Positions 2,925 through 57,955 of a DNA stretch of 64,000 nucleotides are shown here, in pieces (the first letter of the stretch is position 1; each line of letters starts with the position of its first letter). Location: positions 1 to 64,000 of IMG/VR virus record IMGVR_UViG_3300005965_000002. One strand, written 5' to 3'. The position numbers and the translations under genes were made by a program. Under the pieces are notes generated by a model that saw only the letters and a program-made list of their open reading frames with translations, was not told the origin of the DNA and did no database searches.

Positions 2925-3716
2925 CTTACTACTCCTAGTTTCCCAGGCCCTCTCGGTTGTAGTCTGGACTATATCTTCACCCTCAGTTTTACCTGTAGGG
3001 GCCTGACGTATAGTCTCTGAGGGGTCACTAAGACTTCCCTGCGGATTGCCGATTATTATCCATACAGATTTTTACTAATAATCTGCTAATAAGTTGGCAG
3101 ACTCATAGTACTGTAGGCTTTACGGGTTTCCCGCATATAGTCAGGTTTCACGCTCCCAATTACTTGAAAGGTGCTCAGGATATGAAGAACATTTCAAAAG
3201 AACTTCTTAAAAAATACTATCTACAGCAAAAACTTACACCCTATAAAATAGGAGAACTCTTTGGAGTTAACCACAAAACTGTAAGGAGCTACTTAAAAAA
3301 ATACCAAATACCCATGCGTACTGCCTCAGAATATAATTTTTTAGCCCGTAAGAGTCATACAAGACCCGACAAAAAAAAGTTACAAAGTAAATTATCCATT
3401 GCCGGGCATTCTGCTTTTCTTTGTGAAGGTTGGCATACAGAAAAAACAAATGCTTTTTATTTCTGTAATACAGATCCCGCCCTCATTCTTTTGGTCCTTA
3501 ATACGCTAAAAAGGATTTATCAAGTTAAAAGAATCGCTATACAAATAATAGCTAAAGAAAAAACAGGAACTAAAAAATTATTTGATATCTTTCCAGAAGC
3601 CTCCTTTATTGTTGAAAAAGATAGAAAAACTCCTATAGTTCGCCTTAGGTGTGGGGGTAAAAATCTTGCTAGAGAAGTAATAGAAAATTCTTACAGAATA
3701 GTTACTTCACTTTACT
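2925..3716 (-). ncRNA. group I intron (792 nt) in anticodon of tRNA-Leu(TAG)
   Basis: Inserted after U34, ends in G; core elements TCAGAGACTA and AAGATATAGTCC present. Confidence 0.9.
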
Positions 3717-5726: not shown

Positions 5727-5817
5727 TGGCGGAGGGTGAGGGACTCGAACCCCCAACACCCGAAGGTGACCGGTTTTCAAGACCGGAGCGGTCAACCAAA
5801 TTACGCTTTAACCCTCC
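5727..5817 (-). tRNA. tRNA-Ser(TGA)
   Basis: CCGGT-CTTGAAA-ACCGG, long variable arm, CCA. Confidence 0.92.
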
Positions 5818-12406: not shown

Positions 12407-13174
12407 CTTACTACTCTTGCTTTCACAAGCCGCTATAACGTTGTAGTCTGGACTATATCATCTCCTTAGTAAAACCTTAGGAGGGACGTGCATAGTCTCT
12501 GAACCTTCCCCATTTTAAAGGGGCTCGGCTGCTGATTACCCAATCTCTGATAGTTTTTTAACTTTCACACCCGCTGTTTTCAGCCATGTTGTAGTCATCT
12601 GAGCTATAAGGGCTTTCCAGCAATTCTCGTCCTGCTCACCTATTGATTTCTCAATAAGGGCTCTTTGATCCCTTATAAAAAAGTGAAGCCTGCCATGCTG
12701 CATCCTACTAATAATTATCATGTTACTTAAAGAGTTGTCTTTTATATCACCGTTAATATGATGAATAACTTCGTTATAAGAAAGTTTTCTCTTCAAAACT
12801 TGTTCAGCTATTACCCGGTGTATATCTTTAGAACTTCCTTTAAGTTTATTGTAATTACCAGTAGCATTGTTACCTATTTTTGAGACTTTTCTATAGCATT
12901 CTAAACAGTACTTTTGGTCTTTGTGGTTTAGCTTAATTTTTTTAGTGCATAAAACACAAAATCCCCAACCGTATCTATTTTTGTAAGCCGCTCCTCCTTT
13001 TTGAAGATAAAAATATTTACGTCTTTCTAGGTAACAAGGATTACAGTATCGTCTTCCTTTTGTTGGCGGGATCTTTTTACATTTAACACAAAGCCTCTCC
13101 ATAATAACTCCTTTTATTGGAAGGACCAATATTAGGAGATTATGGTGGACACAACGTGTCAAGTGTAAAAAACA
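12407..13174 (-). ncRNA. group I intron (768 nt) in anticodon of tRNA-Leu(TAA)
   Basis: After U34, ends ...AGTAGTAAG; TCAGAGACTA and GATATAGTCC core elements. Confidence 0.9.
12536..13102 (-). CDS. intron-encoded HNH homing endonuclease with zinc fingers
   Basis: HRVIAE..L.R.L...EVIHHING...DN...N motif; CxxC pairs; start at ATG 13102 with RBS GGAG. Confidence 0.85.
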   Translation of the reverse strand: MERLCVKCKKIPPTKGRRYCNPCYLERRKYFYLQKGGAAYKNRYGWGFCVLCTKKIKLNHKDQKYCLECYRKVSKIGNNATGNYNKLKGSSKDIHRVIAEQVLKRKLSYNEVIHHINGDIKDNSLSNMIIISRMQHGRLHFFIRDQRALIEKSIGEQDENCWKALIAQMTTTWLKTAGVKVKKLSEIG

Positions 13175-14204: not shown

Positions 14205-14290
14205 TTAAAAGGAAGACTCTATGAAACAGAGTCTTCCCTCTATATAAAAAGGACAATTTCCTAACTAATGTGCCTATCAATGCGTCAAAA

Positions 14291-14302
14291 TGTCAAAGAG
14301 CA
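14291..14302 (-). promoter_or_regulatory. boxA-like antitermination element TGCTCTTTGACA
   Basis: One mismatch to rrn boxA TGCTCTTTAACA; lies upstream of a hairpin+T4 (14207-14237) and the tRNA block. Confidence 0.7.
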
Positions 14303-14308
14303 ATCTAA

Positions 14309-14458
14309 CTATCGAGTTTTGATGATCTTCACTCGATCTATTCTTTTTCTAACTTCTTCTTCAGGCATCATAGCTACCATACGCCGAGCTTGAGCCTTGC
14401 TTACACAAATTCTTTTTTCAATCAATCCGTCAATGAGTTCGTTTTTCTTATCTTCCAT
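14309..14458 (-). CDS. 49-aa protein with S4-like motif (not in ORF track)
   Basis: RBS AGGAGG; MEDKKNELIDGLIEKRICVSKAQARRMV... Confidence 0.55.
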   Translation of the reverse strand: MEDKKNELIDGLIEKRICVSKAQARRMVAMMPEEEVRKRIDRVKIIKTR

Positions 14459-14474
14459 ATCTCCTCCTAAACGC

Positions 14475-14715
14475 AAAAAACCCCTCCCAGGTTTGCTGGA
14501 AGGGGTTTTTCTAACTATCGGTATCTTTTGCTTATTTCGTTAGAAGTTCCTCCCAGCTACTATTGTATTCGCACAGAGATATGAATACAATAAGGTCCAT
14601 GCGGCTGATGTCAGCACGGTATGCAAGGACTGTAGTGTGGAGGATGTCGATTTCATTTCTTTTTTCCCTTAAACAAGTTCATTCCTAATATACCTTTTTT
14701 TCGCTGGATATTCAA
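14475..14715 (-). promoter_or_regulatory. attenuator 1: promoter TTGAAT-N17-TATATT, leader ORF 14656-14540, antiterminator, terminator 14510-14475
   Basis: Leader MKSTSSTLQSLHTVLTSAAWTLLYSYLCANTIVAGRNF; GCTGGGAG..TTCTAAC pairs with GTTAGAA..CTTCCAGC of the terminator 5' arm. Confidence 0.85.
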
Positions 14716-21996: not shown

Positions 21997-22502
21997 GAGC
22001 ATGCTTTCATAATTAAATAGCTATCAATTTTTCTTTTAATGTTGTCTATATGTTTGTCCAGACTCCAAGAAATATCTTCACCTAATTCTGGGTGGATAAG
22101 ATTTAGCTGAATAAACACATCTTTTTCTCTTTTATACCCGGGTTCTACGCCGACTGCAATCTCATGTAGATAGTCAGCTTTGTATTGTCTAAGGGCTACC
22201 TGTCTGCCGAGTTCATACATGCAAATAGGCTGGTCGCTAGGGGCATCGCTAAACCACATTGAAAATATGTCACATTGGTTTAGTGCGTGGAATTCCCAAG
22301 TAATTTGTTCCTCAGAAGCGTTTGGGTCATCGATAGGAAAGTTTTCTCTCCGAGGATTTAAAATGATACAATCAGTACCTTCTAATCCTTTGATTACTTC
22401 ATCCTGCCAATTTGGGCAGTTTGTTATACCTCCGGCTAAAAACACGGAAGGTAATCCTTGTACCCCCAACGTAAACGGACGAGGAGCTGTGTACAGTATC
22501 AT
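21993..22502 (-). CDS. nucleoside 2-deoxyribosyltransferase-like protein
   Basis: VFLAGGI..CPNWQ, LNPRR, QITWE, ELG motifs. Confidence 0.8.
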   Translation of the reverse strand: MILYTAPRPFTLGVQGLPSVFLAGGITNCPNWQDEVIKGLEGTDCIILNPRRENFPIDDPNASEEQITWEFHALNQCDIFSMWFSDAPSDQPICMYELGRQVALRQYKADYLHEIAVGVEPGYKREKDVFIQLNLIHPELGEDISWSLDKHIDNIKRKIDSYLIMKACS

Positions 22503-23616
22503 TTTATCTCCTGGAAAATCCCATGGTTTTATTTTTATTTTTTATCTGATTTAGAGTGTACTTCAGCTTTATAATTGCATTTGCGTAAACAGAAAAAGCT
22601 GTAATCAGGTTAGCAGTCAGCATTAAAATATAGGCTGCTTTCGCAAATGCTTTTTTTGTTCTCATATTGAGCATTACTGTTGGACCTCAAACACCTCTTC
22701 ACAGAGATGGTAGCTGTCTCTTTTTTCTTTTGCGATGGCTCTACATTTATCGCATTCGCCATCAGGCTTCCTATGCACGCAAACTACATTCTCATAAAGA
22801 GGATCCCAGGTTACGTAAACCTTTTCTTTATCTTTATTGTGTGAGTAGGATTTCTGAGCCTCAAGTACCCAACCGATATTTAAATTAAAAAGATGCTCAA
22901 GAGAATCGTACTCTTTATCTGGTATATGTCCCTTTAGGGGTATTAACCGACCAACACAGCTAGTCCAGTATCTACCCTCCCCCAAGGATTGTAAATCATA
23001 ATAGTAGTCATCTTTATCCGTTTTGAAATCTATCAAACGTACTACCGTCGTTCCGTCTATCAGCAGATCACCTTTATGTTTTTCAACAAACTGGATTAAA
23101 TCAGTTTTAGAAGATTGAGGGAAGTATGAATCGCAATCTTTGAGGTTGGTTTCTTCCTCGGCGCATTCAGATTTGGGGAGAGGAGTTACTTCGCCGGTTA
23201 GATATTCAAACTTATATCTGCAGGATTCACAAGGACCCTTCATACGTCATTCCTTTTCCATCCGTAGTTAAAAATAAACCAGTCTGCAGCTTTTTTTAGT
23301 TCTGTTTTTCTTCTCGATGATGGGAAGCGAAGCATCTCAAGTCGAGCTTCTTTGGTTTTGTACCAATAATCTACAAGCCAGTCATGAAATGAGATCTCTT
23401 CTTTTTTATTCCATGTGTGTGAGCAGTACCATTGGGGGTCAAAGAAATCAACATCTTCATATTTGACATTTACTCTGCTACACATTTCTTTCAGTGCCGC
23501 TTTTACATGGGTTCCAAACTCTCTTTTTTGAGGTTTATCTTGAGTGTCCATAGATATCTCCTTTTCAAAGCACAGAATAATGTATTATTTGGAGATCCGT
23601 ATTTAAAGAAAATTAG

Positions 23617-23688
23617 AGAAGAAGGCAGGAATCGAACCCACGCCTTCTCCCGGACAGGGAGTGTTCAACCAGCTTAAACTACTTCTTC
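23617..23688 (-). ncRNA. atypical tRNA-Asp(GTC)-like RNA
   Basis: Acceptor GAAGAAG/CTTCTTC, normal T arm, anticodon arm CTCCC-TGTCC-GGGAG (5-nt loop). Confidence 0.6.
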
Positions 23689-23872
23689 TCTAACATAGAG
23701 GCGGCTAAGGCCTTCAGGTGGCTACAAGGTTTTTCCTTGTTATCCATATTTATCACGCAACCACAAACTGTGCAGATTACGTTTGATACCTTAAGTGTGT
23801 GGGTTTCTACTCGTTCGAAGGCTTTTTTAATTTCTTCTACATCAATAGTCATATTATATTCTCCTAAAAAAA

Positions 23873-23947
23873 TGGCGGGCCCACGGAGAATTGAACTCCG
23901 GTTACGAGATTGACAGTCTCGCGTCCTAGCCACTAGACGATGAGCCC
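23873..23947 (-). tRNA. tRNA-Asp(GTC)
   Basis: CGAGA-CTGTCAA-TCTCG; CCA. Confidence 0.93.
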
Positions 23948-23953
23948 TTAAAC

Positions 23954-24031
23954 TGGTAGGGACGCCCGGGATTGAACCGGGGACAACGCGGATTTTCAGT
24001 CCGCTGCTCTACCAAACTGAGCTAAGTGGCC
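23954..24031 (-). tRNA. tRNA-Phe(GAA) with mismatched (chimeric) acceptor stem
   Basis: GCGGA-CTGAAAA-TCCGC; 5' GGCCACT versus 3' CGTCCCT has 3 mismatches. Confidence 0.75.
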
Positions 24032-24081
24032 TTAAATTTATTTTAAAGCCACTAAAGTCAGAATCTCCCATCATTGCCTCC

Positions 24082-24304
24082 AAAAAGAGAAACCCCGCTG
24101 AACTTTCGCTCGGCGGGGTTTCTCTTGAATTCACTTTTATAAAAAGTTATCTTCGAGACCCCCGCCCGGGCATAATATCATCGCCACTATCAAAATCGAT
24201 AGCGCTCATGCTGATGATAAAAATGCTGGTTACGATAGTCATTGAAGATAAACTCCTATTCATTGGTTCGTTTCTAATATACCCTTTTGTTACAAGGAAT
24301 TCAA
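24082..24304 (-). promoter_or_regulatory. attenuator 2: promoter TTGAAT-N17-TATATT, leader ORF 24242-24147, antiterminator, terminator 24126-24082
   Basis: Leader MTIVTSIFIISMSAIDFDSGDDIMPGRGSRR (RBS AGGAG); GGCGGGGGTCTC pairs with GAGAAACCCCGCC. Confidence 0.85.
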
Positions 24305-24392
24305 ATACTTTTTTCAGAAAGTTTAGGAACCCATTAATAATCTTATAATATTTTCTTGTTATAAGATATTTTCTGTAAAGAGGGGCTACATA

Positions 24393-26543
24393 ATGGATTG
24401 GGTAGGATTAAGTTTATTTGGATATAGAGAAGCTGCAAGAAAATTTAAAAAACCTGCAGATCTTCAGTCTATACTAAAGACCATCAATATCACCTCAGAA
24501 CAATTTGAAGAGATTCGAAAAGAGGTGGCTCAAAAAGATACAGCCGGGTTAAAAGTAACTGCTCAGACTTCTGGGGCTATTGAATTATATGATCCGATCA
24601 TCACCTACCTTACTTGGATAGTACTACACGACAAGTTTAAATCTAAAAAAGAAAAGCCTGAATATCCTACTCACCAAGAATATGATTTCTTTCATGATTT
24701 ATTAGTTGCTGGTAAATTTGATGATATAAGAAAAATCATATCTAATGATAATGTTCCTCGTAACCAGCTACAGCAATATATACAGAAATTTCAGTCTTCC
24801 AATAAGTCAGATAATAAGCTCACCAAAGAAGATTTGAAAGTTTTAAATAATAAAAAAGAAGTAGTTGATTTAGGGGGAGGGTGGTCTTGGATAACCCTAG
24901 TAGATGATCAAGGCAACATAAAAGGTGGTTCTACGGTACTTACTAAAATACTAGGTCACTGTGGTAACGGTGAAGGTTTACCTGGAGATAAAATGTATCT
25001 ATTAAGTAATAAAACCATGGGACTTATACCTACTATCAAAGCTACAGTTATTGTTGATGGTGAAGGAAAAATCAGGGAGTCTAAGGCTTCTTTCAATAGA
25101 AAGATAAACATTAATAAATATGGGGGTGCCTTCTTAAAACTTCTTGAGCAACCTTTCGTAAAAGGCCTAGACGATAGTGGTGCTTACATGGCTGATTCAA
25201 ATCTCCATATGAGTGACTTTTCTGGTACTCCTTTTGAAGAACAAGCCAAGGCTCTTATAGAGAAAAAACCTAATCTTATGAATAATGATTTTGATCAAGT
25301 TATTACTAAATATAAAGATGAAGTATCAAGTCTCTCCCCAGAAGATAAAAAAGACGAATTACGGAAATTATTAGAAGATGGTCATATAAATTTAGTACAA
25401 GCTCGCGCCTTGAATGGCGGAAAATTTCCCTTTACAGACGACGAGTTGGTCGGTATGATTGATGGGGGATTAGATATAGGAAAGATAATTTCTGCCGGTA
25501 ATAGCTTATTTAGCCTTAAAGTGCAGCAAGCTTTAGCAAAAAAAGATCCTTCAAAAAACATCTCTTACATGCTTTACATGGCAGCTACTTTAAATAACAG
25601 TCCTATAGATAAAAAAATTCTTATAGAGGGTCTTAATTCCGCAAAAAAATTTAAAATGAATAGCTTTGCAGGTGATGTAGGAGATGAGACAAAAAATAAA
25701 TTAACTTCTTACTTGAAAAAGAATACTGATTTATTGTCCGCTTATCTTAAGAAAGATCCCTCGGCTATAGATTATTTCCCTGAAGACCAGCGAATGCATA
25801 TATTTAATAAAATGCCCGAGGCGTTCGCCGAAGTGTTTAAAAAAGTTCCTTCGGCTATACGTTATTTCCCTGAAGATAAAAGGATGGATATCTTTAACCA
25901 AATGCCCGAGGCGTTCGCCGAAGGGTTTTATGAAGACCCCTCGTCTATTGGTTATTTCCCTGAAGATAAAAGGATGGATATCTTTAACCGAATGCCCGAG
26001 GTGTTCGCCGAAGGGTTTAAAGAAGTTCCTTGGTCTATAAGTTATTTCCCTGAAGATAAAAAGATGGATATCTTTAACCGAATGCCCGAGGCGTTCGCCG
26101 AAGGGTTTAAAAAAATTCCTTCGGCTATAGGTTATTTCCCTGAAGACCAACACGGTTATATAAAGGAAACTATAAGAAAAATAAATGAGAAGAATAGAAC
26201 AAAGGAAGCGGCTACTATGAACAAGATATCTACCCTGTTAGACACAATAGCCAACCGATTGGAAGCAAAAGGCCTAATTAAGGAAGCTTTCAGCTTAGAT
26301 ACAATAGCAAATACTCTTGAAAAATGTGCTGCTATAGATCCATATGCGGCTACCTTGATAGCCCATGCAAAAGGTAATATGAATCAAATTCAGCAAGCTG
26401 CTCAAGATGTTAAGCAACTAGGGAAGAAAGGTATAGAATCGGTAGGCCCTGTAGAAGAAGTATTAGAAAAGCATAACTTAACTTTAAAGTCCAAGGATGA
26501 GGCTGCTTTAGAAAATCTTTGTGCTAATCTTTTAAAGATCTAA
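24393..26543 (+). CDS. large hypothetical protein with 30-aa tandem repeats and the shared motif near the C-terminus
   Basis: 716-aa ORF; preceded by TAATAATCTTATAAT. Confidence 0.75.
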   Translation: MDWVGLSLFGYREAARKFKKPADLQSILKTINITSEQFEEIRKEVAQKDTAGLKVTAQTSGAIELYDPIITYLTWIVLHDKFKSKKEKPEYPTHQEYDFFHDLLVAGKFDDIRKIISNDNVPRNQLQQYIQKFQSSNKSDNKLTKEDLKVLNNKKEVVDLGGGWSWITLVDDQGNIKGGSTVLTKILGHCGNGEGLPGDKMYLLSNKTMGLIPTIKATVIVDGEGKIRESKASFNRKININKYGGAFLKLLEQPFVKGLDDSGAYMADSNLHMSDFSGTPFEEQAKALIEKKPNLMNNDFDQVITKYKDEVSSLSPEDKKDELRKLLEDGHINLVQARALNGGKFPFTDDELVGMIDGGLDIGKIISAGNSLFSLKVQQALAKKDPSKNISYMLYMAATLNNSPIDKKILIEGLNSAKKFKMNSFAGDVGDETKNKLTSYLKKNTDLLSAYLKKDPSAIDYFPEDQRMHIFNKMPEAFAEVFKKVPSAIRYFPEDKRMDIFNQMPEAFAEGFYEDPSSIGYFPEDKRMDIFNRMPEVFAEGFKEVPWSISYFPEDKKMDIFNRMPEAFAEGFKKIPSAIGYFPEDQHGYIKETIRKINEKNRTKEAATMNKISTLLDTIANRLEAKGLIKEAFSLDTIANTLEKCAAIDPYAATLIAHAKGNMNQIQQAAQDVKQLGKKGIESVGPVEEVLEKHNLTLKSKDEAALENLCANLLKI
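25758..26150 (+). repeat. 90-nt (30-aa) tandem repeat, 4 full copies plus 1 partial
   Basis: TATTTCCCTGAAGA recurs at 25773, 25863, 25953, 26043 and 26133. Confidence 0.95.
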
Positions 26544-30807: not shown

Positions 30808-30968
30808 TTTAATACTCTACTTTATCCGTCTCAAAGGATATACCAGTTTTTTTGACGATAACAGTTACCTGTATATGCTTTAAAGGGATTGGTAAAGGCG
30901 GTAAATAAATGTCTTTTCTATACGGATCATATCTTTTAATCGAAGGAACGAATGGTAACAGTTTTAAG

Positions 30969-31041
30969 CGCCCCCGAAAGGATTCGAACCTTTGACTGAC
31001 TGGTTTTAGGGACCACTCCTCTACCACTGAGGTACGGGGGC
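30969..31041 (-). tRNA. putative amber-suppressor tRNA (anticodon CTA), Trp-like anticodon arm
   Basis: TGGT-CCCTAAA-ACCA; perfect acceptor GCCCCCG/CGGGGGC; G73; C33. Confidence 0.7.
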
Positions 31042-38326: not shown

Positions 38327-38404
38327 TGGTCGGGACGCCCGGATTTGAACCGGGGACCCCAAGTCCCCCAGACTTGTGCGCTGACCAGGCTGCGCCACGT
38401 CCCG
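38327..38404 (-). tRNA. tRNA-Pro(GGG)
   Basis: Loop CTGGGGG; CCA. Confidence 0.92.
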
Positions 38405-41106: not shown

Positions 41107-41312
41107 TATCAAAGAACAAATAAAAAACCCCGGAGAACTCTTGGTTCGCCGGGGTTTTTGATTCTCTTATTGAGCTTTAATCTAGGCCAAAAGAATCCCT
41201 CCCAACGAACCTTCTGTTCGCGGTTGTTGTGGATTAGGATTATTCTGGTTCATGATAAACATAATTTTTCCTCGTCAGTACTAATATACCCTTTTGCAGT
41301 AAAAAATACAAA
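41107..41312 (-). promoter_or_regulatory. attenuator 3: promoter TTGTAT-N17-TATATT, leader ORF 41262-41182, terminator 41159-41122, boxA-like 41118-41107
   Basis: Leader MFIMNQNNPNPQQPRTEGSLGGILLA; GGTTCGTTGGG pairs with CCCGGCGAACC. Confidence 0.88.
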
Positions 41313-57922: not shown

Positions 57923-57955
57923 GTCGAGAACTCTAACCAACTGAGTTACTGGTCC
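57882..57955 (-). tRNA. tRNA with CAT anticodon (Ile2 likely, Met possible)
   Basis: CTCGA-CTCATAA-TCGAG; no CCA; its leader contains ATA twice. Confidence 0.88.

What the first reader, a model, noticed from the sequence alone, without database searches (positions are those of the whole stretch)
23954..24080. Chimeric tRNA-Phe with a foreign 3' acceptor strand and an overlapping mini-ORF
The 5' strand GGCCACT cannot pair with the 3' strand CGTCCCT-ACCA, which would suit a tRNA starting AGGGACG (Ile/Met-like A1-U72, A73). This suggests a deletion or assembly collapse between the T arms of tRNA-Phe and a lost downstream tRNA. Separately, upstream AGTGGCTTTAAA pairs with TTTAAGGCCACT and would sequester the tRNA 5' end. 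An RBS-led mini-ORF, MMGDSDFSGFKINLRPLSSVW* (Asp/Phe codons), runs through that hairpin, a possible second translation-coupled switch on tRNA maturation.
Basis: partly seen in the sequence, partly recalled or inferred. Interest (0 to 1): 0.6.

Follow-up and report, generated by a model that had tools for sequence, protein, structure and literature searches.

The report
Phe/Ile hybrid tRNA pseudogene in phage
A huge phage from a salt lake carries a broken tRNA gene, made when a deletion fused the front of its tRNA-Phe gene to the tail of its tRNA-Ile gene; the gene sits behind a conserved leader region that looks built to sense the cell's tRNA supply.

Summary
On the minus strand, 24031-23954 is a tRNA-Phe(GAA) whose acceptor strands GGCCACU and CGUCCCU form only 4 of 7 pairs. 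Of the other 36 tRNAs in the record, 35 form 7/7 and one 6/7.

It is a real deletion, not an assembly collapse. The exact junction recurs in seven assemblies, including a k141 MEGAHIT contig.

Syntenic relatives carry Phe - Met(CAU) x2-3 - Ile(GAU) - Asp - Asp at this spot. Their tRNA-Ile starts AGGGACG, and its last 32 nt match window 23985-23954 exactly. Phe and Ile share GTCCCCGGTTCAAT in the T arm, where the crossover lies. The product is most likely a dead tRNA.

The 12-bp leader hairpin and the mini-ORF predate the deletion. All six distinct relatives' leaders keep Shine-Dalgarno (SD) + ATG + [S/V]DFS[G/D]F running into tRNA-Phe. Leader/acceptor pairing potential holds in 35 of 36 cells, without significant covariation. 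A switch function is untested.

Beyond the finding, three attenuator-like units precede tRNA clusters in this window. Each has a leader peptide rich in codons cognate to the tRNAs downstream, plus alternative antiterminator and terminator folds. I found no precedent for leader-peptide attenuation of tRNA operons.

The parts
23954..24031 (-). Hybrid tRNA gene (pseudogene). It has a Phe(GAA) 5' acceptor strand, D arm and anticodon arm. Its T arm, 3' acceptor strand, A73 and encoded CCA come from tRNA-Ile(GAU).
   Evidence: Rfam scores it 42.6 bits, against 58.9-62.9 for intact Phe and 66.2 for intact Ile in relatives.
23986..24031 (-). The Phe-derived part: positions 1 to about 46, from GGCCACU to UCCGCGU.
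   Evidence: The closest relative, L028, has the same leader and the same GGCCACUUAGCUCAG start. Alignment A3.
23971..23985 (-). Crossover zone. GTCCCCGGTTCAAT (23984-23971) is shared by the Phe and Ile genes of relative L029. The T at 23985 is Ile-type.
   Evidence: Alignment A3. The contig of the ~93% relative stops matching the window exactly at 23985 (record 27).
23954..23985 (-). The Ile-derived part, 32/32 identical to the 3' end of tRNA-Ile(GAU) of L029 and L031.
24025..24053 (-). Leader hairpin. The 5' arm is 24053-24042, the loop 24041-24037 and the 3' arm 24036-24025. The 3' arm includes all 7 nt of the tRNA's 5' acceptor strand.
24009..24074 (-). Mini-ORF2 (21 aa, MMGDSDFSGFKINLRPLSSVW*). 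Its stop is the UAG in the tRNA D loop.
24077..24081 (-). GGAGG Shine-Dalgarno sequence of mini-ORF2, immediately after the terminator's U tract.
   Evidence: A purine-rich Shine-Dalgarno-like sequence is present in all six relatives' leaders.
24085..24126 (-). Strong intrinsic terminator (14 + 4 bp stem, then a U tract) between ORF1 and mini-ORF2.
   Evidence: Conserved in L028, L029 and L031. L091 has a terminator of different sequence at the same place.
24147..24242 (-). ORF1, a candidate leader peptide: MTIVTSIFIISMSAIDFDSGDDIMPGRGSRR*. Its last codons (24166-24155, GGCGGGGGUCUC) can pair with the terminator's 5' arm and so act as an antiterminator.
24276..24304 (-). Promoter-like site, TTGAAT-17-TATATT. 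The extended motif AAAAGGGTATATTAG recurs exactly at 41295, and with one mismatch at 14699, each time in front of another leader-peptide unit.
23873..23947 (-). tRNA-Asp(GUC), the next gene of the operon, 6 nt after the hybrid.
23679..23852 (-). 57-aa ORF (CxxC...C) between the two tRNA-Asp genes.
23616..23688 (-). Second, atypical tRNA-Asp(GUC), conserved in relatives.

Best explanation
The feature is a hybrid tRNA pseudogene in the tRNA-rich arm of a huge phage. The source is an IMG/VR record of 258.6 kb from a hypersaline lake.

In the ancestor, one operon read: leader - tRNA-Phe(GAA) - two or three tRNA(CAU) - tRNA-Ile(GAU) - tRNA-Asp - tRNA-Asp. The Phe and Ile genes share an identical 14-nt stretch (GTCCCCGGTTCAAT) running from the end of the variable loop into the T loop. 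Recombination or replication slippage between these two direct repeats deleted everything between them. That is 266 nt by the L029 layout, 497 nt by the L031 layout, and probably more than 0.7 kb by the closest relative.

The deletion left Phe positions 1 to about 46 joined to the T arm, 3' acceptor strand, A73 and CCA of Ile. The Phe 5' strand GGCCACU meets the Ile 3' strand CGUCCCU, so only 4 of 7 acceptor pairs form. Instead, the 5' strand is captured by the complementary leader segment in a 12-bp hairpin. The product is therefore most likely not matured or charged (inferred). In one event the phage lost tRNA-Phe function, its only tRNA-Ile(GAU) and its initiator-like and other CAU tRNAs.

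The hairpin and the mini-ORF are not products of the deletion. They are conserved features of the leader of intact tRNA-Phe genes in relatives. The mini-ORF (Shine-Dalgarno, ATG, x1-3, S/V-D-F-S-G/D-F) is probably translated into the 5' half of the pre-tRNA.

The likeliest role, which is inferred and not shown, is this. A ribosome on or paused at the Asp/Phe codons covers AGYGGC and frees the acceptor 5' strand. That would couple tRNA-Phe folding and maturation to decoding capacity. It would sit downstream of a leader-peptide transcription attenuator (ORF1 plus terminator) that gates the whole operon.
For: Shown:
- The acceptor defect, and that this gene is an outlier among the record's 37 tRNAs.
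- The exact 196-nt region is present in seven assemblies: JGI 3300005965, ENA k141_116460, Logan SRR6201977 and SRR6201976, JGI 3300025364 and Ga0208075, plus a 168-nt contig spanning the junction in run X3.
- Syntenic relatives L029/L030 and L031 have intact Phe, CAU tRNAs, Ile, Asp and Asp. Their Ile 3' end is 32/32 identical to the window.
- The hybrid scores 42.6 Rfam bits, against 58.9-66.2 for the intact parents.
- In the ~93% relative (run X4), one contig matches 23623-23871 and 23946-23985 and then runs on for 725 nt unlike the window. Another contig (L028) carries the leader and the Phe 5' part. So the two halves are not adjacent there.
- There is no other copy of the deleted tRNAs in the 258.6-kb record.
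- The hairpin is in the minimum-free-energy fold. The helix pairs in 35 of 36 cells across the six leaders, with U-A, U.G and C-G at one position.
- Mini-ORF: ATG and a Shine-Dalgarno-like sequence in all six leaders; Ser kept through TCT versus AGT; synonymous GAC/GAT and AGT/AGC; an in-frame 3-nt indel in L031.
- The 16-mer GACTTTAGTGGCTTTA is unique in the genome, so it is not a recurrent promoter motif.
Against: - The sequence of the closest relative's intact array was not seen. Only its contig layout was. The ancestral layout is therefore inferred from more distant relatives, whose Phe acceptor stem differs (GCCGCUG).
- No RNA data exist. Non-function of the hybrid, translation of the mini-ORF and any switch are all inference.
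- Covariation in the hairpin is not statistically supported: 327 of 500 shuffles do as well.
- In L091 the AGUGAC/GCCGUU pairing is weak. In L048 and L091 the minimum-free-energy fold prefers the cloverleaf.
- The mini-ORF's stop codon position is not conserved, and L091 has no stop within the tRNA.
Confidence: 0.85

Rival explanations
1. Assembly artefact: the assembler collapsed two tRNA genes at their similar T arms, and the real genome has an intact array.
For: Phe and Ile share a 14-nt repeat.
Against: A 14-nt repeat is far below any k-mer used. The junction is reproduced with 0 differences by JGI, MEGAHIT (k141) and Logan (k31) assemblies of at least five samples from different studies. 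Depth is even across it. No contig in runs X1-X3 joins the window's flanks to an intact array.
Confidence: 0.02
2. The 3' part was copied from the phage's own tRNA-Pro(GGG) gene (38327-38404) by gene conversion, not produced by a deletion.
For: The Pro(GGG) 3' third is 28/31 identical to the hybrid's 3' third.
Against: tRNA-Ile of relatives is 32/32 identical, including the T loop UUCAAUC and U72, where Pro differs. It also sits at the syntenic position, with the same downstream neighbours. The window lacks exactly the genes that lie between Phe and Ile in relatives.
Confidence: 0.03
3. The hybrid is still a working tRNA or tRNA-like RNA. It might tolerate a loose acceptor stem, be repaired after transcription, or act with the upstream AGUGGCU as a surrogate acceptor partner (a permuted or split tRNA logic).
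For: The D, anticodon and T arms, A73 and CCA are all intact, and the gene scores above the Rfam threshold. The sequence is identical in all samples. The upstream AGUGGCU is a perfect partner for GGCCACU.
Against: Two C.C and one U.C mismatches in a 7-bp stem are unlike all 36 other tRNAs here. The leader complement is present in relatives whose tRNA-Phe is intact, so it is not an adaptation to the loss. The leader strand would close the acceptor end with a loop and leave no aminoacylatable 3' end in register. No bulge-helix-bulge motif or permuted layout is present. Identity across samples is expected for a recent deletion.
Confidence: 0.08
4. The conserved leader block is not a translated ORF. 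It is an RNA or DNA element whose open frame is incidental: a processing site, a protein-binding site, a phage-specific promoter, or the decayed 3' end of an older upstream tRNA-Phe copy.
For: The block is conserved at nucleotide level (GAYTTTAGYGRCTTTA). It mimics the 3' acceptor strand of tRNA-Phe. More distant relatives have tandem tRNA-Phe genes (L096). The ORF's C-terminal part and stop are not conserved.
Against: ATG and a Shine-Dalgarno-like sequence are kept in all six leaders, in three different upstream contexts. Ser is kept with unrelated codons (TCT versus AGT). The indel is in frame. No sigma-70-like site passes the scan there, and the motif is unique in the genome.
Confidence: 0.35

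Closest known systems
Hybrid tRNA genes and tRNA pseudogenes made by unequal recombination or deletion between neighbouring tRNA genes. Examples are deletion mutants of the phage T4 tRNA cluster and tRNA pseudogenes in organelle and bacterial arrays (from my own knowledge; not checked in the paper library).
   Same: The breakpoints lie in the conserved T-arm sequence shared by two tRNA genes of one cluster. The product keeps a cloverleaf body but has mismatched acceptor strands. The intervening genes are lost.
   Different: Here the parent genes, the microhomology and the lost genes can all be read from natural relatives. The event removed a phage's only tRNA-Ile(GAU) and its initiator-like tRNA.
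Ribosome-mediated (leader-peptide) transcription attenuators: trpL, hisL, pheL/pheA and pheM/pheST (e.g. PMC3082878 for pheL).
   Same: This applies to ORF1, and to the units at ~41.2 kb and ~14.6 kb. Each has a promoter, a Shine-Dalgarno-led short ORF with a run of regulatory codons, and an ORF 3' end that can pair with the 5' arm of a strong intrinsic terminator. An additional 1:2 pairing is seen in L091 and at 14.6 kb.
   Different: The controlled genes are tRNA genes, not amino-acid biosynthesis or synthetase genes. The regulatory codons match the tRNAs encoded downstream: I/D/F/M, N/Q and L/Y/C. Four literature searches found no described case. Mini-ORF2 itself lacks a following terminator, so it is not a classical attenuator.
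Pre-tRNA 5' leaders that pair with the acceptor strand and modulate RNase P cleavage (general knowledge of pre-tRNA processing).
   Same: The leader segment is complementary to acceptor positions 1-7 and competes with the 3' acceptor strand.
   Different: Here the competing segment lies inside a conserved, Shine-Dalgarno-led mini-ORF with Asp/Phe codons just upstream, so a ribosome could gate the pairing. No such arrangement is known to me.

Membership tests
Canonical tRNA (Rfam RF00005) | Score above the family gathering threshold. | tested here: met
   42.6 bits against a threshold of 29. This is the second lowest of the 38 tRNA matches, and 16-24 bits below the intact Phe and Ile of relatives.
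Canonical tRNA (Rfam RF00005) | A 7-bp acceptor stem formed by the 5' and 3' ends. | tested here: not met
   Only 4 of 7 pairs form, with C.C, C.C and U.C mismatches.
Canonical tRNA (Rfam RF00005) | D arm, anticodon arm with a 7-nt loop, T arm with UUCRANY, and a discriminator plus CCA. | tested here: met
   alignment. The anticodon is GAA, followed by A73 and an encoded CCA.
Canonical tRNA (Rfam RF00005) | Processed, CCA-ended and aminoacylated in vivo. | not testable with these tools
   No RNA runs hold this sequence.
Hybrid tRNA pseudogene by inter-gene deletion | The 5' part is orthologous to one tRNA gene and the 3' part to another gene of the same array. | tested here: met
   Alignment A3. 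The Phe 5' part matches L028. The 3' 32 nt equal the Ile of L029 and L031.
Hybrid tRNA pseudogene by inter-gene deletion | Relatives keep both parents, with the intervening genes, at the syntenic locus. | tested here: met
   L029, L030 and L031 carry Phe-Met-Met(-Met)-Ile-Asp-Asp with the same flanking protein genes. L091 also has separate intact Phe and Ile genes.
Hybrid tRNA pseudogene by inter-gene deletion | The junction is real in DNA (independent assemblies or reads). | tested here: met
Leader-peptide transcription attenuator (ORF1 unit, 24304-24085) | A short Shine-Dalgarno-led ORF with clustered regulatory codons. | tested here: met
   IDFDxxxDDIM is conserved in 5 relatives. 8 of 10 residues fall in {F,M,I,D}, P = 0.001. 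The sets of the other loci are not enriched.
Leader-peptide transcription attenuator (ORF1 unit, 24304-24085) | An intrinsic terminator, plus a mutually exclusive antiterminator that involves the ORF's 3' end. | tested here: met
   In L091 the terminator has a different sequence, yet the end of ORF1 is again complementary to its 5' arm.
Leader-peptide transcription attenuator (ORF1 unit, 24304-24085) | Read-through responds to the supply of the cognate charged tRNA. | not testable with these tools
   Needs in vitro or in vivo transcription assays.
Leader-peptide transcription attenuator (mini-ORF2, the finding's ORF) | A terminator hairpin with a U tract downstream of the ORF. | tested here: not met
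   The hairpin 24053-24025 is AT-rich at its top and is followed by UAGCUCAG, not a U tract. Mini-ORF2 is therefore not filed as a classical attenuator.
Permuted or split tRNA gene | The 3' half lies upstream of the 5' half, with bulge-helix-bulge processing motifs at the junction. | tested here: not met
   Only a 7-nt acceptor complement lies upstream. No such motif is present. The same complement exists upstream of intact tRNA-Phe genes.

The most novel reading that the evidence does not exclude
The tRNA-Phe leader is a two-stage, ribosome-read control unit for phage tRNA supply.

Stage 1 is a leader-peptide transcription attenuator. Its regulatory codons (Ile, Asp, Phe, Met) are exactly the tRNAs encoded downstream.

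Stage 2 is the finding's mini-ORF. Its Asp/Phe codons sit immediately 5' of a segment that pairs with the tRNA's acceptor 5' strand. A ribosome slowed there would unmask the strand and license folding and RNase P maturation of tRNA-Phe.

Together with the N/Q leader (before Asn-Gln) and the L/Y/C leader (before Cys-Leu-Tyr), this would be an undescribed class. In it, a virus measures decoding capacity codon by codon and tops up the matching tRNAs.
Probability: 0.25. Interest if true: 0.88.

Novelty: new variant of a known kind. Interest (0 to 1): 0.6.

Why it matters
The hybrid gene is a dated, natural example of how phage tRNA arrays lose genes. One microhomology-mediated deletion removed four or more tRNA functions. 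It warns annotators that tRNA finders still call such a gene "tRNA-Phe".

The leader matters more. In relatives, an intact tRNA-Phe is preceded by a conserved, probably translated mini-ORF that overlaps a sequence able to sequester the acceptor strand. The operon also lies behind what looks like a textbook leader-peptide attenuator whose sensor codons match the tRNAs it controls. Two further units of the same design lie in this window.

If these work as they look, phages regulate their tRNA genes by direct feedback from ribosome speed on the cognate codons. That would give a testable answer to why and when large phages express their tRNAs.

Tried and rejected
- Assembly collapse: rejected.
- tRNA-Pro(GGG) as donor: considered after (28/31 identical) and rejected in favour of the syntenic tRNA-Ile (32/32).
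- GenBank phages (blastn, 3 kb): only generic tRNA matches and no relative.
- IMG/VR exact-pattern scans for the Phe 5' part, the T arm plus 3' strand, and the Ile 5' part: no relative. GGCCACTTAGCTCAG found unrelated phage tRNAs, all with a proper AGTGGCC/AGTGGTC 3' strand. CCGGGCGTCCCTACCA hit non-tRNA sequence.
- Protein-guided IMG/VR scans with the 716-aa and 189-aa neighbours: nothing. The JGI metagenome scan returned only identical copies.
- The 57-aa ORF has no homologues in the word search.
- The genome-contig scan for the leader motif gave only chance hits. Of the 57 IMG/VR hits to the 16-mer, only L048 was a true relative.
- More distant relatives (L095-L100) have lost synteny, or have tRNA-Phe preceded directly by another tRNA.
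- A sigma-70 promoter inside the leader does not pass the scan. A recurrent genome-wide motif is excluded because the 16-mer is unique.
- Covariation test of the hairpin: not significant.
- A mini-ORF running into tRNA-Met at 57955 was inspected. It has no good Shine-Dalgarno spacing or leader/acceptor complement, so it was not counted as analogous.
- MAFFT alignment A1 of the whole arrays mis-aligned the T arms and was not used.
- No RNA runs are available, so expression is untested.
- The sequence of contig 'record 27' of run X4 could not be fetched, because its small ORF is not in the protein index and the reads tool was capped.

Full report
**Source and setting**

The window is the first 64 kb of a 258,580-bp IMG/VR virus record. 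It is linear, and CheckV rates it 55% complete. Public runs that hold it come from hypersaline-lake and microbial-mat metagenomes. GC content is 34-43%.

All 37 tRNA genes of the record lie in this window, and all are on the minus strand. Two group I introns are also present. No relative exists among GenBank phages.

**Observation**

On the minus strand, 24031-23954 reads GGCCACU-UA-[D arm]-[GCGGA CUGAAAA UCCGC]-GUUGU-[CCCGG UUCAAUC CCGGG]-CGUCCCU-A-CCA.

- Rfam scores it 42.6 bits and flags three non-canonical acceptor pairs. ARAGORN's shifted register is no better.
- The pairs are G1-U72, G2-C71, C3xC70, C4xC69, A5-U68, C6-G67 and U7xC66.
- Of the other 36 tRNAs, 35 have seven standard pairs and one has six.
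- The upstream AGUGGCUUUAAA (24053-24042) pairs with UUUAAGGCCACU (24036-24025) in the minimum-free-energy fold.
- The GGAGG-led ORF MMGDSDFSGFKINLRPLSSVW* spans 24074-24009.

**Not an assembly error**

Contigs were laid on 22000-26000.

- A 13.6-kb Logan contig of run X1 has 0 differences.
- A 1870-nt contig of another sample and study (X2) has 2 differences, neither in the tRNA.
- A 168-nt contig of a third sample (X3) spans 23956-24123 with 0 differences.

Contigs fetched through neighbouring proteins all contain the identical 196-nt region 23940-24135. These are a MEGAHIT k141 contig of 16.3 kb, two JGI contigs from other samples, and two Logan contigs. A 14-nt repeat cannot collapse at these k values.

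**What it is**

Members of the 90% cluster of the neighbouring 206-aa kinase-like protein led to syntenic contigs of relatives.

- L029 (and the identical L030) carries, downstream of the same leader: tRNA-Phe(GAA), tRNA(CAU), a tRNA(CAU) of initiator type (C1xA72), tRNA-Ile(GAU), tRNA-Asp and tRNA-Asp.
- L031 has the same order with three CAU tRNAs.
- Their tRNA-Ile reads AGGGACG...AUGUCCCCGGUUCAAUCCCGGGCGUCCCUACCA. Its last 32 nt are identical to window 23985-23954 (alignment A3).
- The Phe gene of L029 shares GUCCCCGGUUCAAU with Ile and differs at the next base (U versus C). At that base the window carries the Ile-type C.
- The crossover therefore lies in 23985-23971.
- The distance between the repeats is 266 nt in L029 and 497 nt in L031.

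The closest relative is in run X4, 90-96% identical over the aligned pieces.

- One of its contigs matches 23623-23871 and 23946-23985 and then continues for 725 nt unlike the window.
- Another (L028) carries the leader and the same GGCCACUUAGCUCAG start, and ends in the Phe anticodon loop.
- So the two halves are separate genes in that strain, and the deletion is younger than that split.

The intact parents score 58.9-62.9 bits (Phe) and 66.2 bits (Ile), against 42.6 for the hybrid. No other copy of the lost genes exists in the 258.6-kb record. Because the record is incomplete, absence from the whole genome is not proven.

**Function of the hybrid**

With two C.C and one U.C mismatches, and with the 5' strand held in a 12-bp leader hairpin, normal RNase P recognition, EF-Tu binding and charging are unlikely. 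This is inference from general tRNA biology. No RNA data exist. I rate it a pseudogene at about 0.8.

**The hairpin and the mini-ORF are ancestral**

There are six distinct leaders: the window, L028, L029, L031, L091 (L092 and L093 are essentially the same) and L048. L048 comes from a 292-kb IMG/VR contig found by the leader 16-mer. The leaders were aligned.

All six keep a purine-rich Shine-Dalgarno-like sequence, an in-frame ATG, and then [S/V]-D-F-S-[G/D]-F. The peptides are:

- window: MMGDSDFSGFKINLRPLSSVW*
- L028: MMGDSDFSGFMINLRPLSSVGRAGD*
- L029: MEDSDFSGFRNKCRCSSVGRAPV*
- L031: MEVDFSGFRNMKSYAAVAK*
- L048: MKSDFSGFTMPL*
- L091: MSMEESDFSDFIL... (no stop within the tRNA)

Signs of coding or decoding constraint:

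- Ser is kept as TCT versus AGT.
- GAC/GAT and AGT/AGC are synonymous changes.
- L031 has an in-frame 3-nt indel.
- The ATG is kept in three unrelated upstream contexts.

The C-terminal part and the stop are dictated by the tRNA sequence and are not conserved.

The 6-bp core AGYGGC/GCCRCU pairs in 35 of 36 cells, with U-A, U.G and C-G at one position. Shuffles do as well in 327 of 500 trials, so covariation is unproven.

The minimum-free-energy folds of the intact pre-tRNAs differ. L029 and L031 prefer leader pairing. L048 and L091 prefer the cloverleaf. In L031 the strongest partner of the tRNA 5' strand is the mini-ORF's own initiation region (CAGCGGCAU). L091 has a GCGGCAC copy further upstream.

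The 16-mer GACTTTAGTGGCTTTA is unique in the genome, and no sigma-70-like site is called there.

My reading is that the mini-ORF is probably translated (about 0.6). A role in gating acceptor-strand availability is plausible (about 0.25-0.3) but untested. It is not a classical attenuator, because no terminator follows it.

**Context found while following the leader upstream**

A conserved 31-36-aa ORF1 lies at 24242-24147. In the relatives it reads ...IDFD[S/R][G/D/F][D/M]DDIM.... It sits behind a promoter-like site and ahead of a strong terminator at 24126-24085.

Its conserved block uses only Ile, Asp, Phe and Met. These are the tRNAs of the operon in relatives. The enrichment has P = 0.001, and the codon sets of the other loci are not enriched.

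Before the terminator's 3' arm is made, ORF1's last codons (GGCGGGGGUCUC) pair with the terminator's 5' arm. This holds in the window, L028, L029 and L031. It also holds in L091, where the terminator sequence is entirely different and a 1:2 pairing is added.

The same promoter motif (AAAAGGGTATATTAG) occurs only twice more in front of short ORFs.

- At about 41.3 kb: MFIMNQNNPNPQQPRTEGSLGGILLA*, an 11-bp antiterminator, a terminator, then tRNA-Asn and tRNA-Gln (P = 5e-5).
- At about 14.7 kb...WTLLYSYLCANTIVAGRNF*, a 9-bp antiterminator with z = -4.9, a terminator, then a 49-aa ORF and tRNA-Cys, tRNA-Leu and tRNA-Tyr (P = 0.0095).

Four full-text searches found no report of leader-peptide attenuation of tRNA genes. 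This lies outside the finding's coordinates and is only partly followed up. It frames the mini-ORF as a possible second layer of control.

**Verdict**

The deletion hypothesis is strongly supported, and the donor is identified as tRNA-Ile(GAU). Assembly collapse is excluded.

The hybrid alone is an ordinary, if neat, pseudogene. The conserved mini-ORF and hairpin leader, and the attenuator-like units around tRNA clusters, are what deserve further work.

Noticed in passing
window 24085-24304 (-), with relatives L028, L029, L031 and L091: A leader-peptide attenuator-like unit lies upstream of the tRNA-Phe operon. It has a promoter-like site and ORF1 (MTIVTSIFIISMSAIDFDSGDDIMPGRGSRR*), with the conserved block I-D-F-D..D-D-I-M. 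Those residues match the tRNAs downstream in relatives (Phe, Met, Ile, Asp). The end of ORF1 is complementary to the 5' arm of a strong terminator. L091 keeps the design with a different terminator sequence.
   Followed up: partly
window ~41110-41310 (-): A second unit of the same design: the same promoter motif, the leader MFIMNQNNPNPQQPRTEGSLGGILLA*, an 11-bp antiterminator and a terminator, then tRNA-Asn(GUU) and tRNA-Gln(CUG).
   Followed up: partly
window ~14205-14715 (-): A third unit: the promoter motif, then the leader MKSTSSTLQSLHTVLTSAAWTLLYSYLCANTIVAGRNF*. It has 1:2, 2:3 and 3:4 alternative pairings. After it come a 49-aa ORF, a second hairpin, and tRNA-Cys, tRNA-Leu and tRNA-Tyr.
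   Followed up: partly
window 23873-23947 (-): The first tRNA-Asp differs completely in sequence from the tRNA-Asp at the same place in L029 and L031. In the ~93% relative, exactly this gene is replaced (74 nt versus 76 unrelated letters) while both flanks align. This looks like gene-by-gene cassette replacement within the array.
   Followed up: partly
window 24393-26543 (+): A 716-aa ORF with no Pfam match. In L028, L029 and L031 the ORF at the same place is only 108-109 aa. The L028 protein falls in the same 90% cluster as the 716-aa protein. The window's version is therefore a large extension or fusion.
   Followed up: no
window 30968-31041 (-); also L091-L094: A tRNA with anticodon CUA (an amber suppressor, which ARAGORN calls 'Pyl'), conserved in relatives. 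This may indicate TAG recoding in part of the genome.
   Followed up: no
window 2944-3239 and 12433-12677 (-): Two group I introns (Rfam 79 and 67 bits) within the tRNA-rich arm. The host genes were not examined.
   Followed up: no
window 5727-5817 (-): ARAGORN calls this a 91-nt tRNA-Ala(CGC), but it looks like a type II tRNA. It has a long variable arm and the same acceptor stem as tRNA-Ser(GCU). Its loop CUUGAAA gives anticodon UGA, so it is probably tRNA-Ser(UGA). Rfam scores it only 31.4 bits.
   Followed up: no
window 23616-23688 (-): An atypical second tRNA-Asp(GUC) (43 bits) with an odd anticodon arm, conserved in L029 and L031. It overlaps the end of the 57-aa ORF by 10 nt.
   Followed up: no
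window 38327-38404 (-), compared with the tRNA-Ile of relatives: tRNA-Pro(GGG) and tRNA-Ile(GAU) share nearly the same acceptor stem ((C/A)GGGACG) and T arm. This suggests that tRNA genes of different specificity in this phage lineage arose from one another, and it provides further repeats for recombination.
   Followed up: no
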